32,581 nt of DNA from Guillardia theta CCMP2712 (Eukaryota; Protista; Cryptophyta), in NCBI RefSeq assembly GCF_000315625.1, contig NW_005434619.1:72529-105109 (forward strand). Direction: 5' to 3'. A model generated the notes under the pieces. That model saw only the letters and a program-made list of their open reading frames with translations. It did not search any database and was not told where the DNA came from. Positions 1 to 14,953 of this stretch are shown here, piece by piece. How positions within the stretch are numbered: the stretch's first letter is position 1; every line of letters starts with the position of its first letter. The position numbers and the translations under genes are program-made.

Positions 1-53
1 GGAGGAGGAGGAGGAGGAGGAGCAGAAGCAGGAGCAGGAGCAGAAGGAGGGAC

Positions 54-1438
54 CTGTTCAAGATCCTTCCTATGGGAGTCGAATCGAAGAATGACATGGG
101 AGCTTTCATGACAGAGTCAAGCATCCTGTTTGAGCAAGTCAGAGACGGAGAGGAAGAAGATGGGGGAGAGAGGAAAGAGGAGGGGAGGGGAGGTGAGGGG
201 GATGATGAGAGGAGGGATCAGAGGAAATCGGATGGGGGGGGAAGAAAGGGACAAGGAAGCGAAGAAAAGTTTAGAGCACAATAGATCGAAGATGGGAGAG
301 AAGGAGAGAGGATGGGAGCAGGAAACGTGATGGGGGAAGAGAAGAAATTTCCTGTTGTGCAGGACAGAGGCAGCTCGAAGCTCCATGAGCATCAATGACA
401 CGTCTCTGATCAAAAAGAGAGCCTGCAAAAGAATAAAGAAATTACCATCGTCTAATATCGTCGTCGTTGTGATGATCATGATCATGATCGTCACTCTCCT
501 CCCCCCCCCCCCCCCCCCCCTTTCTCATCGTCATCATCTTCACCGTCACAATCGTTCTTTGCTTCTCTCCTCCTCCTCCTCCTCCTCCTCCTCCTCCTCC
601 TCCTCCTCCTCCTCATTCATCATGATGATCATGATCATCATCATCATCGTTCTGTGCTTCTTCTCTCCCTCCCTCTTACCGCAGACCCGAAGTTCCAGGT
701 AGCATAAACTCCGAGGTAGAAGGCGACTCGGTGACGGTCAGCAGCAGAGGCCCACTTAGTCAGCCACCAGTCGTTGCCGTTCCTTGCCGCCTGAGCAGAC
801 GAGCTCGTGAGAAGAGGAGAGGGAAGGAGAGGGAGGGAGAGGGAGGGAGAGGGAGGGAGAGAGGAGGAGAGACAGTGGTTGGTCTGAAGAGAAGAAGCGT
901 GCAAAGGAAAGAGAGTAGAGAAGAAAAGAAAAGATGAGTAGGGAGAAGGGAAAGAAAGAAAACAGAAAAGGACAGGAAAAAGGAAGGGAAGGGGAGGGGA
1001 AGGAAGGGAAGGGAAGGGAAGGGAAGGGAAGGGAAGGGAAGGCAAGGCAAGGCAAGGCAAGGCAAGGCAATGAAAGCAAGGTAGTCCTCAGATGCTTCAG
1101 CTCAGGTCTACCTGACTTAAGATACCAACAGCAGATATGATAGCGATGTACTTCAACCTGCGACAGAACAGTCAGCCAAACTCACGACAAACAAGGCAGG
1201 ACAAGGAACACCCCGTCCACCCCTCTCATGAGTCTTCTCAACCTCCTGCCTCTCCTCTCTGCCTCTCCTCCTCTCCTCTCTCCGTCTCCCTCCCAGCCCC
1301 CTCTCCCTCCCTAACTGTCCCCAGCTTACTTGAGCTCTCGGAAGTAGAAAGCGTACACATCGTGCGACACCGCTCCTTGCTTCTTGCTCTCCGGAGTCAC
1401 CTGACCGTCAGCCGTAAACAGTCAGACGCGGTTACGCC

Positions 1439-1504
<66 letters not shown>

Positions 1505-4037
1505 CCTGCTGGAACATCGATGGAGATCTCTTTGCCATCCCAGCAATCGCCGACGACCCAGACGTTCCTCCCTCCCCTGTAGTACTCTCCTCCTTGGACT
1601 TCTGACCTTCCTCACCACTTGCAGCAGCAGCAGAGGAGGAGGAGGTGGTGGTGGAGGAGGAGGCGACAGCAGGAGTCGCAGGAGCAGACGACGGCGCCGA
1701 TGCTGCAGGAGCAGAAGCAGGAGTTGCCTCAGCATCCTGCTTCTTCTGCGCACCCTCCTCTCCCTTCTCCTCCTCCTGCTTCTTGCTCTCATCCTCGCTC
1801 ACGTTGTCGATCACGGACTCCAGGTCCACTCCCTGCATCCTGATCTCGCTCAGCGTCCCCTGCGCCTGCACCTTCCCGTCCCCGAGCACGACAATGTAAT
1901 CCACCAGCGGCAGCAGGTCGAGCTTGTGGGTGACCAGAACTCTTGTCTTGTCCTGCAGCAGACGGATGAGGCAGTCGTCTAGCACGTGCGAGCCCACGTG
2001 ACTGTCCAGGGCGCTCATGACGTCATCCAGGAGGAGGCAGTCGAAGTTCTGGTACACAGCCCGGGCCAGCGCTATCCTCTGCTTCTGACCTCCCGACAGG
2101 TTCACCCCCCTCTCCCCGATCTCCGTCTCGTCTCCGTTGGGGAATTTTTCCAGGTCCGCCTCAAGCGCGCAGGCCTTGAGGACCTCCCTGTACCTCCTCT
2201 CGTCCATCGGCTTGCCGAACAGGATGTTGTCTCGGATGTTGGCGTTCTGGATCCAGGCCTGCTGCGGCACGTAGCCGACCTCTCGGGGTGCCCTCACTTC
2301 TCCCTCAAGGCACTTAGCATCTCCCAGCAGTGCAGATAGGAGGGTCGACTTGCCGCTGCCCACTTGGCCAACAATGGCCGTGAGACTGCCGCGGGGGATC
2401 TTGATGTTCACGTCCGTGAGGATGGGCCGGCTGGCGTTCCAGCCGATGGTGGCGGACTGGAGCTGGAAGGGGAGGAGGTCCTGGGAGGAGGTAAACTGAA
2501 TGTGCGAGAGGTCCCGCTCCTCAAGGCTCATGAACTCGTTGATCCTGTTGAGGGCGACGCGGCCTGAGACGATGGAGGAGATGAGGAGGGGGAAGACGAA
2601 GAGGGGGAAGGACATGATGTTGATGATGCTCAGGGCGGGCAGGACGACCTGCATGGTAAGGGGGTGCCCGAGAGCAGCGTATGCTCCGAATGTCGCCACG
2701 GAGACGGTGACAGGGGCAGAGTTCCAGAAGATGCTCTGCATGCTAGCGATGTAGCCATACCTCCGCAGCCTCTTCACCTCTTTCTTCCTGACGTCGGCGA
2801 TGCGGCGCAGCAGAGGCTTCTCCCACGCAAACATCTTGATGACCTTGATGCTGTGCAGCATCTCCGACACCTGCTTGACCCTCCTGTCCTTCTCCACCAT
2901 GTTCTTCTCCTGCAGTTTGCGAAGCTGGATGAGGATGGAGGCGTTGATGGGCATGATCGCGATCATAACTAGCAGGCCAACCAGGGACGCCACACCAACC
3001 ATGCGGTACAGGAGGATCATGGAGAGCAAGATCTGAAGGGGAGAGCTCCATACCAGGTTGTGAAGGTACGGCACAAGGTCGACGATCCTCTGGACATCGA
3101 CGGACATGAGGTTGACAAGCTCGCCGAGCGACTTCTGGTGGCGCGAGGAGGAAGACAACTTGAGCGACTTCTTGTAGATGCAGGAGACCAGCGCACCCCT
3201 CATCTGCATGGAGACGTCGAAGACCTTGTCGAAGTACTTATGCAGCGCCACCGAGGAGGCGTACTGGATCACGAAGAAGCACATGCACAGAAAAATGCCC
3301 TCCCGCCATGTCGGGACGTGGTCCATGCCCTTGGGGTCGACGTAGCGGTACACGGCCTTGACCAGGAAGGGAGAGAGGAAGGCAAGGAGGTCGTGGGGTA
3401 GCTTCCACAGCCCCCCACACATAAAGGGTACCTTGAAGACCCTCCAGGAGGCAGACAGGAGCGTCGGCGCCATGCTCTCCGAGCAGTTGCGCAGGAACTC
3501 CCTCATCTCCAGCTCCTCGGTGGTGTTGGCCGAGCAAGAGGATGGGTCTTCCTTCAACGCGCGCTCCAAGGCAAGTCCATGGACCTCGGCCTTGTCCTCC
3601 TCAGGAAACGGCGGCAGCTCCTGTTCCTCCAGGGGGTGGTCATAGCCGGCCTTGATGAGGGGATACATGTAGGAGAAGGTACTTCCTGACAACCATGTCT
3701 TCCTTGCCAGCCGAATCTTCTTGTGCTCCTCCGCCCCCTGCTGTAGATCTGAACTGCTCCCGTTGCCCCCCGACAGTCTGGTGTTGTTGGAGTTGACAGC
3801 AGGAGGGGCAAAGGCAGTGAGATGCTCCTTCCTCTTCAGCTGAGCTTTCGCTGGGCTAGAGGTGGCGGACTTTGAGAGAGAGTTTGCTTTCTTGGGCGAG
3901 TCCAAGGACATGTGATGTAAGGCATTGGCGCTGCTGACGCAAAGCAAGAGGGCAAGGGAAAGGCAAGCCATCCTGACGGATCGAGCAGCTCTGGTGAAGG
4001 ATGCTTTCATCGGCATGCTGTCCACCTCCTTCGTCAT
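54..4037 (-). CDS. ABCC: ABCC/MRP-type ABC transporter, 5' part (TMD1-NBD1-linker-start of TMD2); continues beyond the left edge of the window
   Basis: Large first exon ~4037-1506 encodes TMD1 and NBD1: Walker [20 protein letters not shown], signature LSGGQKQR, Walker B LLLDD, SALD. Hand-spliced exons stay in frame: 1400-1330 ([20 protein letters not shown]), 1157-1112, 790-680 ([10 protein letters not shown]...FYLGVY), 422-352 (RAASVLHN), 125-54 ([23 protein letters not shown], the ABCC TMD2 motif). Start is uncertain (ATGs at 4037, 4016, 4010, 3971). Confidence 0.95.
982..1068. repeat. (GGGAA)n/(GGCAA)n pentanucleotide repeat, intronic
   Basis: Visible tandem pentamers in ABCC intron 791-1111. 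Confidence 0.9.
1440..1500. repeat. (TCA)n microsatellite inside ABCC intron 1401-1505
   Basis: About 20 TCA units between a GT donor (1505) and an AG acceptor (1401) on the minus strand. Confidence 0.95.
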
Positions 4038-4786
4038 GCCAAACACGCTGAGTTGACCGCTCCTGGTGCGCTAGTTCGTAGAGGATATCAGAGTTCTCGT
4101 CGAATAGAAATCAGTCCGGTGCTGACATGGCCTGATGGAGGGGATTTGGGTCGATGTGCGAACTGACGGCCAGAAGTCAGGAAGACAACAAACATTTCAA
4201 ACTACTATCATGCAACTGGATGCTAGGAATGATCTCTCCTTCCTGATTCTATCGCTGATACGATGCCTTGACGTACATGTACCCTGAAAGCTCAGTGGAG
4301 AAATGCCTCCCGCATTCATGTCCTCACAATTATACCACAGATCACATCGCTTCTGTTCTTTCCTCTCCCATGCGGGATACACCTCTCCCTTCTCTCTTGC
4401 ACCCGCCCCCGCCACCCCGCCCCCCTCCCTCCCCCCTCCCCCCTCCCCCCCTCCCGTCCCTCCCCCCCCCCCCTCCCCCGTTCCCCGCCCCTGCCATCCT
4501 CTGCCTCACACATAAGGACAACTACCCCGCATCCCCACTATGACCCTGCTTTGGGCCCCATGCATCTCTGGGGCGGACCTGGCAGAGAGGGAGGTGGAAT
4601 GAGCGGGGACGAGGGCTGAGTATTGCAATGCTGTCGTGGCTTTCGGAGAGATCGACAGTCAAGGAGGAAGGAGGGAGGAAGAGGGAGGAAGAGGAGGGGA
4701 GGCCGAGGAGCAGGAGATGAGAGGAAGAGGAGATGAACTGCTAGACACAAGGGACAGCGCTGGAGGAGCCTTGTTCATGGAGTTCC

Positions 4787-7700: not shown

Positions 7701-9896
7701 CGATGAGCTTCAGTCTGTGCAGGAAGCAGTCTTACGATCTCTCTCTTCGCACAAGGTTCTTGCCCTCTCCCCTCCCCTCCCCTCCTCCCCTCTCCCTCCG
7801 TCTCTCCGTCTCTCCCCTCTTGCCCCTCACTCTTCCTCCCGGGCTTGTTCCTCTCCCCCTCTTTATTTTCCTCTTGCCTCTCTTCCTCTGCCCTCCTCCT
7901 CATCATCGTCTTCTAGGCGGTCAACATTAGAAAGGGCTTCTACAACTGGAGCGACTCGTCTCCACTGGTAAAGAATTCCTCCTCCTCCTCCTCCTCCTCC
8001 TCCTCCTCCTTCCCCACCACTTCCTCCTCCTTCCCCTCCTCTTCCCCCTCGTCCTCGTTCTCCTCCATTGCCTCGTGCTCTGTGACCTGACCATTCTCTC
8101 AGGTGGTCAATGGCTTTTTGAATCTTGTTATCTCCTCTCCTCTTCGCGGTACGAGCGTAATAACAAACATGCAGGCAAGCGAGGAGGAAGCGGTCATGCG
8201 GGGATCCTGGTCCCTGGAGGAGAGCAGGTAAGGATGAAGAGGAGCAGCGGCATCGGCAGCCTGCGCAGGAGCAATAGGAGCAACAGCAAACAGCGCAGGG
8301 GGAGGGCAGGGGCGGGAAAAGGAGCAGGAGCAGCAGGAGTGCGTAGTTGTTGTGACGGAAGCATTTCGAAGGAGAGAGGGAGAGGAGGAGGGGGCAGAAG
8401 GGAGCAAGGAGGGAGGGGAGGGAGAGGAGGGAGGAGAGGCACGAGGAACCAAGGTGAGCAGGATGGACGCTTGACTGGTTTTACAGCTCAGGAAGTTTCC
8501 GAGGATNNNNNNNNNNNNNNNNNNNNNNNNNNNNNNNNNNNNNNNNNNNNNNNNNNNNNNNNNNNNNNNNNNNNNNNNNNNNNNNNNNNNNNNNNNNNNN
8601 NNNNNNGAGAGGAGGAGGAGGAAGGCATATCGTAATGTTTCATGGCCAGGGAGGATATGCGTTGAGCTTTACGGAAGACGCAAACTGCACGTTGAGACGA
8701 GTAGCGATCAGGTGAGCAGGAGGAGCAGGAGGAGTTAGGGGGGTGGGGGGCGGGCAGAACCGAGACCGAGAGGAAGAGGATTGGACTGGACTCAGACTTT
8801 CTTCAGCGGGTTTCAGTATGGTATGTGCTTGGGCGACAGCGCGCAGGTATCAAATGAGACGAAGAGCGAGGAAGAGAGAAAGGGAGGGAGGGAGGGAAGG
8901 ACGAGGGAAGGCAGGAGCAGGATGAGTTGACGGCTTGTCTGGCTCAGGTGTCAGTGATGGAAGGGAGCGAGATCAAGTGCGAGCACGCGATCGTGCTGGG
9001 GAACGTGTCCTCAGACGCGAAGCTGGTGCTGAGCAAGGGAATCACTTTGCAAGAGGAACTGTGCAGCCCAAGAGATCTGAGCCGGTAAGAGGTGGAGGGG
9101 AAGAGGAGGAGAGAGGAAGGGAGAGGAGACGAGGATTGTGGTGCAGGAGAGGCAGGAGAAGAAGGATGAAACGAGTGAGGACGAGGAGGAGATGGAAGAC
9201 CAGGAAGGGGAGGACGAGAACGAGGAGGAGGAGGAGGAGGAGGAGGAGAAGCAAGGGGAGGTGAAACATGAGGGGGAAGAGGAGAAGGAGGAAGGGGGAA
9301 ACGATGACGATAACCGGTTGCAGGCTCAAGGAGTTGATTAGCGCAAACTTGATGGCGGAGGAGGGAGCATGGATATTCGAGGAGGAGGGAGAGCGCAACT
9401 TGATTTCTTCCATGGCTCCTGTTGGACCCTTCTCTCCCATCCTCAGAGGTGTGAGACTGCTCGCTGCTTCCTCCCTCCTTGACGAGGTTGCCGCAGAGGT
9501 AGAGGGCCTTCGTCACGGGGACTTGGTGGCATGCGGTATGAATCATCCCCTCTCCCTACCCCTCCTGCTCTCCTCCTCGTACTCCTCCACCTCCTCCTCC
9601 TCCTCCTCCTCCTCCTTCCTCCTGCCCCTTCCCAATTAGTCACATCGGCAACAGGAGGAGATTTCAGCCCTGCAACGTGGTCAGCAGCATCGAATTCAGA
9701 GGAGCAGGACGCTGGGAGGAGGAGGAGAGGAGCGCGGGGGAGCAGGCTAGCGGTGCTGGGGAAGGAAGAAGAGGAGGAAGGAGAAGGTGACGAGGAGGAG
9801 GGGGGGGCTGAGCAGGAGGGGGAGACGTCAGAGATTGCGAAGCGAATCTTTTACGAAGGACAAGATGACGATGAAGATTCAGATAACAGCCTGTGA
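4787..9896 (+). CDS. Multi-exon protein: long N-terminal coiled coil, probable beta-helix-like segment, acidic C-terminus (may be two genes; spans a gap)
   Basis: First exon is E/K/R/L heptad-rich. Many small GT-AG exons keep the frame, e.g. VKFAQVQMEYQIFMEMEARNRQ, NDVENLRYQLESRDAELR, KLRSLEDETRQLEDEKGYLREQLEEERR. Later exons MRGSWSLEESSSGSFRG, YALSFTEDANCTLRRVAIR and VSVMEGSEIKCEHAIVLGNV look like beta-helix repeats. Stop at 9896. N gap at 8507-8606. Confidence 0.65.
8507..8606. other. Assembly gap (100 N)
   Basis: Run of N. Confidence 1.
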
Positions 9897-10148: not shown

Positions 10149-11632
10149 TCATGGGTTGTCGGGGTTTGACCCTGCAGCTGACATGCGGCAGATTATGATG
10201 ATCTCCTCCTTGTGTGCTCCGTTGGTGCCTGACAAGTGAAAAGTGAGAACAAGGGTGGAGGGAGAGACTGAAGTTGTGATGTCAATGAGAGAAGGAGCAG
10301 GAGACAACACGAGACGAAGGAGAGGAGAGGGAGGAGGAGAGAGCAAGAGATTCTGGGCTGGGAGACAGCGAGCAATGACAATCACGACTGTCATGGAGGA
10401 AAACTCACACTCGTTCTCAACCTCCTCGATCGACAACTGCAGCCCAAGACAACAGTCAGGACCAGCAGCAGGACAAACCCCTCCTCCGCTCCTCACCCCG
10501 ATAGCGCATGCGATGGCATCATAACACCTCGAGCCATCGCACAGGGAGAGCAGCTTGTTCAACCAGCGTCACGCGCTGTCGCACCGTACCATCCTCTCAC
10601 CTTCGCCGTCAAGTCCTTCCCGTTGTTGCCCTGGGATGCTGCAGGTTCTTTCCTTGACGCTGTGATGCTTGACTGCAAAGAGAGCGCAGATTCAGCGAAG
10701 AACATCTGTGCAAGTGAGACAACTTCGACCTTCTCCTCTCTTCATCTCCTCATCTCCCCCTCGTGACCTCCTCTTCTCTTCCTCTCCTTTTCTTCTATCA
10801 GCCCTGCCTCCTCCCAAAGTCCCACAGCCTCTTCCCCTTGACTGTTCTCCTCTTATTTCAGTCCCGTCTTTGTTACCATCCCCTCCCTCTCCCTTCTCCT
10901 CACTCGTACTACCCCCCCACACCCCCCCACACCCCCAGCCCCCTTGTTCTCTCTTCTCTCTCCTCCTCCCATTCCTCCCTTTCTCTCCTCCTCCTCCTCC
11001 TCCACTATATCTCTATCCTTATCCTTCCATCCACCTTCACACCTGACTCGGTCCTGTCCAAATCGGCCAGTGGTGCATTCTCCGCAGGTATCTGACATGT
11101 CAATCAGCAGATGATGCCGTCTCGAAGATGGTTTGCCTGTGAACTCGACCGAAGGTCAAGAGGCGAATGACATCGATGTTGTCGTTCTTCTTGAGAGATT
11201 CAGGAGAGGCGATCTGGACAGCTCTTGAACAAAATCGAAGGATCGATAAAAGAAGGTAGAAGAGAAGGGAATGAGAGGAGAGGGGAGGGGAGGAGGGAAG
11301 AGGAGAGAAGAGGAAAGGAGGGGAGGGGAGAGGAGAGGAGAGGAGAGGAGAGGAGAGGAGAGGAGAGGAGAGGAGAGGAGAGGAGAGGAGAGGAGAGGAG
11401 GGAGAGGAGGAGGAAAGGAGGGAAGGAGGAGGAAGGGGGTAGGGAGGGAGAGGAGGAGGACGAGGACGAGGACGAGGAGGACGAGGACGAGGACGAGGAC
11501 GAGGAGGTCGNNNNNNNNNNNNNNNNNNNNNNNNNNNNNNNNNNNNNNNNNNNNNNNNNNNNNNNNNNNNNNNNNNNNNNNNNNNNNNNNNNNNNNNNNN
11601 NNNNNNNNNNCAATACGAGAGAGAGAGAGAGA

Positions 11633-14853: not shown

Positions 14854-14953
14854 NNNNNNNNNNNNNNNNNNNNNNNNNNNNNNNNNNNNNNNNNNNNNNN
14901 NNNNNNNNNNNNNNNNNNNNNNNNNNNNNNNNNNNNNNNNNNNNNNNNNNNNN
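14854..14953. other. Assembly gap (100 N), probably hiding much more sequence
   Basis: Run of N. The catalytic domain of the adjacent acyltransferase is missing from the window. Confidence 1.

What the first reader, a model, noticed from the sequence alone, without database searches (positions are those of the whole stretch)
126..351. Non-canonical GA-AG intron required in the ABCC transporter
Seen: on the minus strand the exon ends CAC AAC AG|gaaatttc and the next begins aaacag|G ATG CTT GAC. Joining them gives [30 protein letters not shown]. Known: this matches the ABCC spacing LHxx(M/L)LxxVxxAPMSFFD. The nearest downstream GT (cac|gtttcc) is in the wrong phase. Sliding along the AACAGGA shared by both junctions gives no GT or GC start, so only GA-AG keeps a 3' AG. 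GA donors are known mainly from dinoflagellates and a few animals. Inference: this spliceosome accepts AG|GA 5' sites.
Basis: partly seen in the sequence, partly recalled or inferred. Interest (0 to 1): 0.75.

Follow-up and report, generated by a model that had tools for sequence, protein, structure and literature searches.

The report
Real GA-AG intron in cryptophyte ABCC gene

Summary
Confirmed. The window is Guillardia theta CCMP2712 nuclear DNA (G000:C55:72529-105109). On the minus strand an ABCC/MRP-type transporter gene has a 226-nt intron at window 351..126.

- **Transcript evidence:** a spliced transcript-like contig (JGI/IMG 3300017164, L001, protein P0188) is 100% identical to the exons and lacks exactly these 226 nt.
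- **Boundaries:** a 7-nt repeat (AACAGGA) allows eight placements. None is GT-AG, GC-AG or AT-AC, and only GA-AG keeps a 5' G and a 3' AG.
- **Protein:** the junction gives ...AASVLHNR|[14 protein letters not shown]..., colinear with about a dozen cryptophyte orthologues.
- **Public model:** XP_005828981.1 forces GT-AG sites and replaces 23 conserved residues with 16 spurious ones.
- **Frequency:** the other 35 introns on the same contig are all GT-AG, so GA is rare here (1 of 36), not at dinoflagellate level.
- **Machinery:** U1 (three identical copies) and U6 are canonical. No U12 or U6atac was found. The donor CAG|GAAATT matches the U1-complementary consensus at 7 of 9 positions, against a mean of 5.5.

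The genomic A at +2 is therefore not independently verified.

The scan has already flagged GA-AG introns with AG|GAA donors elsewhere in this genome, and one follow-up was positive. This is a new member of a known kind.

The parts
126..351 (-). Intron 5 of the ABCC gene, 226 nt, GA-AG (5' GAAATTTC ... CTCAAACAG 3'), CT-rich
   Evidence: Absent from transcript contig L001, whose flanking exons are 100% identical to the genome. Of eight equivalent placements only GA-AG keeps 5' G and 3' AG.
346..354 (-). 5' splice site CAG|GAAATT (positions -3..+6); +1 G = window 351, +2 A = window 350
   Evidence: It matches CAG|GTAAGT at 7 of 9 positions, against a mean of 5.5 in 35 neighbouring GT introns.
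138..142 (-). Predicted branch site CTGAC (A at window 139, 13 nt upstream of the 3' splice site)
   Evidence: Sequence only. Similar CTGAC/TGAC motifs sit in other introns of the gene. Not tested experimentally.
126..130 (-). 3' splice site AACAG| followed by exon G (window 125)
352..422 (-). Exon 5 (71 nt), encodes [23 protein letters not shown](R)
   Evidence: L001 2892-2962 aligns at 100%. Conserved in orthologues.
54..125 (-). Exon 6 (72 nt), encodes (R)[23 protein letters not shown](R)
423..679 (-). Intron 4, 257 nt, GT-AG; contains (GGA)n and poly-G runs
680..790 (-). Exon 4 ([37 protein letters not shown])
791..1111 (-). Intron 3, 321 nt, GT-AG.
1112..1157 (-). Exon 3
1158..1329 (-). 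Intron 2, 172 nt, GT-AG
1330..1400 (-). Exon 2
1401..1505 (-). Intron 1, 105 nt, GT-AG
1506..4164 (-). Exon 1: 5' UTR plus CDS from the ATG at window 4016, encoding the first transmembrane domain and first nucleotide-binding domain
   Evidence: L001 5-2663 aligns at 100%. Pfam ABC_membrane and ABC_tran. [10 protein letters not shown] at 4016.
1..53 (-). Start of intron 6 (cag|GTCCCT, GT-AG). It runs 3645 nt leftwards out of the window through an N stretch.

Best explanation
Window 351..126 (minus strand) is a genuine spliceosomal intron of a Guillardia theta ABCC/MRP-type ABC transporter gene, and its 5' end is GA rather than GT. It is most likely removed by the ordinary major (U2-type) spliceosome. 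The cell's U1 and U6 snRNAs are canonical, so the A at +2 is tolerated rather than specifically recognised. Recognition is probably helped by above-average complementarity of the rest of the donor to U1 (CAG|G.AA.T), a good CTGAC branch site 13 nt from a CAG|G acceptor, and a pyrimidine-rich intron. Removal is required for function: retention shifts the frame inside the conserved TMD2 segment LH..ML..V..APMSFFD. Shown here: the exact removal in a transcript contig, the absence of any canonical placement, the protein colinearity, and the canonical snRNAs. Inferred: that the cut is at G|GA rather than another of the eight equivalent placements, the U1-compensation mechanism, and the branch point.
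For: Organism and gene: there is a 100% match to GUITHDRAFT_88223. Pfam finds ABC_membrane and ABC_tran.

Transcript: P0188/L001 (JGI/IMG 3300017164) reads ...[22 protein letters not shown].... L001 aligns to the genome at 100% identity in exon blocks and lacks 36 segments; 35 of these are GT-AG in the correct orientation for two convergent genes, so it is RNA-derived. The 226-nt gap admits only the eight non-canonical placements. The exons spliced this way reproduce P0188 residues 1-960 exactly.

Conservation: about a dozen cryptophyte orthologues are gap-free across the junction, while the public model P0001 is not.

Machinery: three identical U1 genes have the 5' end ATACTTACCTGG and no variant copies were found. 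U6 has ACAGAGA. No U12 or U6atac was found, which agrees with PMC11347168.

Donor strength: 7 of 9 matches against a mean of 5.5; only 4 of 35 GT donors reach 7.

Single haploid locus: there is no intron-less second copy, and the nuclear genome is haploid (PMC4007541).
Against: Only one transcript contig supports the junction. The genomic A at +2 (window 350) was not confirmed from independent DNA; the metagenome pattern scan and ORF look-ups were blank. A 7-nt direct repeat at both ends is also the signature of reverse-transcriptase template switching. However, canonical introns in this sample carry repeats of up to 7 nt too. Splicing efficiency is unknown. Which of the eight placements is physically cut cannot be read from cDNA.
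Confidence: 0.85

Rival explanations
1. Assembly or sequencing error at +2: the true genome reads GT, so this is an ordinary GT-AG intron.
For: The +2 base could not be re-checked with independent DNA. A single-base error would be enough.
Against: All exon bases of L001 agree 100% with the assembly over 6.7 kb, so the local error rate is very low. Other windows of the same genome carry the same AG|GAA...AG architecture. Recurrent errors at exactly +2 are unlikely to explain that.
Confidence: 0.05
2. Artefact of cDNA synthesis or assembly: reverse transcriptase jumped between the two AACAGGA copies, and the real mRNA is different or the gene is broken.
For: There is a 7-nt direct repeat at both junctions. 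Template switching is a recognised source of false non-canonical junctions (discussed in PMC7072748). Only one contig supports the junction.
Against: The deletion restores the frame and gives a protein colinear, residue for residue, with orthologues from other cryptophytes. No canonical alternative does this, and the public model's GT-AG solution destroys the conserved segment. Repeats of 5-7 nt also flank canonical GT-AG introns on the same contig, including intron 32 with 7 nt.
Confidence: 0.03
3. DNA-level polymorphism: the 226 nt are an insertion with a 7-bp target-site duplication in the sequenced copy, and the mRNA comes from an insertion-free allele or copy.
For: The 7-bp direct repeat resembles a target-site duplication. 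The paralogues have no intron here.
Against: The G. theta nuclear genome is reported haploid (PMC4007541). The assembly holds no second, intron-less copy. The segment is not a repeated element; only weak CT-rich matches were found. It has a branch-site motif and a CAG acceptor like its neighbours.
Confidence: 0.03
4. A minor-spliceosome (U12-type) intron with unusual termini.
For: U12-type introns tolerate more terminal dinucleotide variation. PMC11347168 reports minor-like introns in G. theta by position-weight-matrix scoring.
Against: The donor GAAATTTCT lacks the RTATCCTT box, and there is no TCCTTAAC branch box near the 3' end. No U12 or U6atac gene was found, and PMC11347168 found none either.
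Confidence: 0.02

Closest known systems
GA-AG introns of the copepod Eurytemora affinis and the tunicate Oikopleura dioica (PMC7072748)
   Same: [quoted passage not shown] The site here (CAG|GAAATT) has that context, as do three other candidates on the same contig (gag|GAAGCC, aag|GAAAGC, cag|GAACTC).
   Different: In those animals GA-AG is a large class: PMC7072748 reports 3.2% of RNA-supported junctions in one of these species, and more GA-AG than GC-AG in both. Here it is 1 of 36 locally. A U1 variant was proposed for E. affinis, but G. theta shows only canonical U1 copies. The lineage is also different (cryptophyte).
Dinoflagellate (Symbiodinium) relaxed donors GT/GC/GA (PMC5177918; PMC5100056 reports up to 65 GA-AG introns per dynein gene)
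   Same: A GA donor before a normal AG acceptor, with G usually following the acceptor (26 of 36 here).
   Different: In dinoflagellates GA and GC are predominant classes. Here 35 of 36 introns are GT-AG and none is GC-AG.
Human FGFR GA-AG intron (Brackenridge et al. 2003, as cited in PMC7072748) and the Trema orientalis SYMRK GA-AG intron (PMC10668435)
   Same: An isolated, functional GA-AG intron in an otherwise GT-AG genome, spliced by the major spliceosome.
   Different: The FGFR case was reported to depend on a canonical splice site 6 nt upstream. Here the nearest upstream candidates are GC at -9 and GT at -14.
ABCC/MRP subfamily of ABC transporters
   Same: The domain order is TMD-NBD-TMD-NBD. 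The best named homologues are ABCC1/3/MRP. The conserved TMD2 segment LH..ML..V..APMSFFD.TP.GR.LNRFS is present.
   Different: No TMD0 domain (PF24357) is listed for this protein. The substrate is unknown.

Membership tests
U2-type (major spliceosome) GA-AG intron | Segment precisely absent from mature mRNA while flanking exons are retained | tested here: met
   L001 versus the genome: 226 nt missing, exons 100% identical
U2-type (major spliceosome) GA-AG intron | No GT-AG, GC-AG or AT-AC placement possible; GA-AG possible | tested here: met
   All eight placements listed
U2-type (major spliceosome) GA-AG intron | Donor otherwise complementary to a canonical U1 5' end | tested here: met
   U1 5' end is ATACTTACCTGG in three copies. 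The donor matches 7 of 9 positions.
U2-type (major spliceosome) GA-AG intron | Branch site (CTRAY) and pyrimidine-rich tract upstream of a YAG acceptor | tested here: met
   CTGAC at window 142-138, 13 nt from the CAG| acceptor, in a CT-rich intron. This is a sequence motif only.
U2-type (major spliceosome) GA-AG intron | Lariat with a 5' G joined to the branch A; cleavage exactly at G|GA | not testable with these tools
   Needs lariat RT-PCR or branch-point sequencing
U2-type (major spliceosome) GA-AG intron | Genomic +2 base really is A | tested here: inconclusive
   The assembly says A. Independent DNA was not obtained.
U12-type (minor) intron | Donor box RTATCCTT and branch box TCCTTAAC | tested here: not met
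   The donor is GAAATTTCT and there is no TCCTTAAC near the 3' end
U12-type (minor) intron | Minor snRNAs present in the genome | tested here: not met
   No RF00007 or RF00619 match in G000 (absence is not proven). PMC11347168 found none either.
Dinoflagellate-like relaxed donor code | GA and GC donors make up a large share of introns | tested here: not met
   1 GA, 0 GC and 35 GT among 36 transcript-defined introns. The sample is small.
Introner / transposon-derived intron family | Many near-identical copies in the genome | tested here: not met
   Only weak matches over the CT-rich part
ABCC/MRP ABC transporter | Two ABC_membrane plus two ABC_tran domains in one chain, with closest named relatives ABCC | tested here: met

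The most novel reading that the evidence does not exclude
Guillardia theta, and perhaps cryptophytes generally, carries a percent-level class of AG|GAA...AG introns spliced by a spliceosome with fully canonical U1 and U6. That would be an independent, third or fourth evolutionary origin of GA-donor tolerance, after dinoflagellates, a copepod and appendicularians. It would be systematically hidden in the public annotation, because the gene models were forced onto GT/GC donors.
Probability: 0.45. Interest if true: 0.65.

Novelty: new member of a known kind. Interest (0 to 1): 0.45.

Why it matters
**Annotation.** The reference protein of this ABCC transporter (XP_005828981.1) is wrong in a conserved transmembrane segment and truncated at the N-terminus. 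Any gene of this alga with a GA donor will have been mis-modelled in the same way. That affects comparative and phylogenomic work, where G. theta serves as the reference cryptophyte.

**Splicing evolution.** GA at the 5' splice site is usually a dead end. Finding it used in a lineage with canonical U1 and U6, in the same AG|GAA context as in a copepod and a tunicate, points to context compensation rather than a special snRNA. It also gives a tractable single-celled system for asking what makes +2 A tolerable. I found no paper in the searchable library reporting GA-AG introns in cryptophyte nuclear genes.

Tried and rejected
Places 940-975 were not sent to any search tool afterwards, and local alignments left them out or blanked them.
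- **Junction-spanning protein fragments.** A search for further G. theta transcript-derived fragments across the junction found only orthologues at 77% identity or less.
- **Metagenome pattern scan** for the unspliced donor, with N at +2, found 0 matches.
- **The search for related loci** with another window gene, to obtain a second transcript, found nothing.
- **Exact look-ups of the read-through ORF**, which exists only if +2 is A (a T would make TAA), found nothing on record.
- **Introner or repeat-family hypothesis:** rejected.
- **Second intron-less copy:** none.
- **Paralogue comparison of the intron position:** the paralogues have no intron here, so this was uninformative.
- **Variant U1 with an altered 5' end:** none.
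- **U12-type reading:** rejected.
- **RNA editing to restore GU:** A-to-I would give a G-like base, not U, and no A-to-U editing is known. This is rejected on general knowledge only.
- **Rfam scan of window 1-930:** only a chance-level miRNA hit, 22.5 bits against a gathering score of 230.
- **Joined exon model:** it was never sent to a search tool. It was compared only locally with P0188.

Full report
**1. What is in the sequence**

On the minus strand the window reads ...CTGTCCTGCACAACAG|GAAATTTCTTCTCTTCC...GACTTGCTCAAACAG|GATGCTTGACTCTGTC....
- Exon 5 is window 422..352, the proposed intron is 351..126 (226 nt), and exon 6 is 125..54.
- Joining the exons gives [47 protein letters not shown].
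- 226 is not a multiple of three, so retention shifts the frame.

**2. Organism and gene**

The 882-codon open frame at 4070..1425 carries ABC_membrane and ABC_tran domains. It is 100% identical to GUITHDRAFT_88223 of Guillardia theta CCMP2712. The next hits are cryptophyte sequences at 57-68% identity, followed by animal ABCC1/ABCC3/MRP proteins. The window is G000:C55:72529-105109.

**3. The public model avoids the GA donor and is wrong**

The public protein P0001 (XP_005828981.1) reads ...[36 protein letters not shown].... It uses an alternative acceptor inside exon 5 plus the out-of-frame GT at cac|GTTTCC. This replaces 23 conserved residues with 16 unrelated ones.

Cryptophyte orthologues, including a Hemiselmis transcriptome protein (P0005) and about ten metagenome or transcriptome fragments, read ...LF(L/W).RDV.LML.EL.A.S..H..ML..VM.APM.FFD.TP.GR.LNRFSNDQ with no gap. 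That is what the GA-AG junction gives.

**4. Transcript evidence**

P0001's 90% cluster has a second member, P0188 (1461 aa, JGI/IMG sample 3300017164). It contains ...[43 protein letters not shown].... Its contig was fetched as L001, 6756 nt.

I aligned L001 to the window and to the left flank fetched from G000.
- Every exon block is 100% identical to the genome.
- 36 genomic segments are missing from L001: 15 in the ABCC gene and 21 in a convergent neighbouring gene. Of these, 35 are GT-AG in the orientation of their gene. L001 is therefore spliced RNA of the same strain.
- The 36th missing segment is window 351..126.
- Because AACAGGA occurs at both ends, eight placements are equivalent: AA-CA, AC-AA, CA-AA, AG-AC, GG-CA, GA-AG, AA-GG and AA-GA. 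None is canonical. GA-AG alone keeps the 5' G and the 3' AG.
- The in-window exons, spliced this way, reproduce P0188 residues 1-960 exactly. This was a local comparison only; the joined model was not sent to any search tool.

**5. Alternatives at the DNA level**

- The intron is not a repeated element.
- The assembly has no second, intron-less copy.
- The nuclear genome is reported haploid (PMC4007541).
- The three paralogues that match this region have no intron here, so they say nothing about an ancestral GT.
- A 7-nt terminal repeat is not unusual on this contig. Canonical introns carry repeats of 0-7 nt, and the exon after the acceptor starts with G in 26 of 36 cases and with GT in 14 of 36.

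**6. Machinery**

- G000 has three identical U1 genes in tandem (C2:80288-84087) with the canonical 5' end ATACTTACCTGG.
- A pattern search leaving positions 5-7 free found only these three copies.
- U6 has the canonical ACAGAGA box.
- No U12 or U6atac match was found. This agrees with PMC11347168, which also found no minor snRNA genes in G. theta.
- The donor lacks the U12-type box.
- The GA donor CAG|GAAATT matches the U1-complementary consensus CAG|GTAAGT at 7 of 9 positions. The 35 GT donors average 5.5, and only 4 reach 7 or more.
- A CTGAC branch motif lies 13 nt upstream of the CAG|G acceptor.

The most economical mechanism is ordinary U2-type splicing that tolerates A at +2, helped by a strong remaining context. 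This mechanism is inferred, not shown.

**7. How common is it?**

Locally it is 1 of 36, far from dinoflagellate levels.

The scan's own notes list about 40 entries on GA-AG in this genome, and one positive follow-up. I treat these as leads only.

I fetched three of the noted places on the same contig.
- All three have the AG|GAA...AG architecture (gag|GAAGCC, 46 nt; aag|GAAAGC, 49 nt; cag|GAACTC, 180 nt), and each joins two long open frames.
- In the third, the Pfam Glyco_transf_7C match stops at profile position 53 of 78, exactly at the proposed donor.
- None of the three was checked against transcripts.

The AG|GAA context is the same as reported for E. affinis and O. dioica (PMC7072748).

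**8. Literature**

Searches for Guillardia or cryptophyte together with GA-AG or non-canonical splice sites returned no report of GA-AG introns in cryptophyte nuclear genes. GA donors are documented in:
- Symbiodinium (PMC5177918; PMC5100056);
- E. affinis and O. dioica, and human FGFR (PMC7072748);
- a plant SYMRK gene (PMC10668435).

**9. What is missing**

I have no raw-read support for the junction, no intron-retention estimate, and no independent check of the genomic A at window 350.
- Attempts to find independent DNA were blank.
- Some loci that the genome search fetched automatically (L018, L020, L022, L025) span those places. They were not used further.

**10. Verdict**

It is a new member of a known kind. 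Whether G. theta has a sizeable GA-AG class is open, and an RNA-seq junction census would settle it.

Noticed in passing
window 54-4164 (-), protein P0001 versus P0188: Beyond the GA-AG site, the public model XP_005828981.1 has other errors. It starts 197 residues too late (MAPTLL... instead of MPMKASF... at window 4016). It skips exons 2-3. It translates the 3' part of intron 3 (about window 886-797) as [32 protein letters not shown].
   Followed up: partly
L001 4538-4570; G000:C55 about 66201-66169: The transcript contig joins two convergent genes whose stop codons are only 31 nt apart. Either their 3' UTRs overlap in antisense, or an unstranded assembly merged them.
   Followed up: no
G000:C55:69105-72528, immediately left of the window: A 3424-base N stretch (an assembly gap or withheld sequence) lies inside ABCC intron 6, so the stated intron length of 3645 nt is nominal.
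   Followed up: no
36 introns on L001 (C55:62796-76692): Intron ends often repeat each other: 0-7 nt of identity, and AG|GT at both ends in 14 of 36 (G after the acceptor in 26 of 36). The neighbouring gene's 21 introns are all 43-85 nt, while the ABCC introns are 49-321 nt.
   Followed up: partly
G000:C55:164498-164543 (+), 186446-186494 (+), 219104-219283 (-) = L032, L033, L034: Three further candidate GA-AG introns, noted by other readers, with donors gag|GAAGCC, aag|GAAAGC and cag|GAACTC. Each joins long open frames. In the third, the GT7 (Glyco_transf_7C) Pfam match stops exactly at the donor.
   Followed up: partly
G000:C2:80288-84087: Three identical U1 snRNA genes in tandem, about 1.7-1.9 kb apart, all with a canonical 5' end. 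Only a single U6 match was found (C22:748433-748538), and no U12 or U6atac.
   Followed up: yes
window 8507-8606, 11511-11610, 14854-14953: Three runs of exactly 100 N (scaffold gaps) inside the window.
   Followed up: no
window 423-679 (-): Intron 4 holds long simple repeats: (GGA)n of about 50 nt, a G run of more than 20, and ATG/ATC-type repeats. Exon 1 also encodes long low-complexity Ser/Ala/Thr stretches between the first nucleotide-binding domain and the second transmembrane domain.
   Followed up: no
They lie in intron 3 and were left out of all later searches.
   Followed up: no
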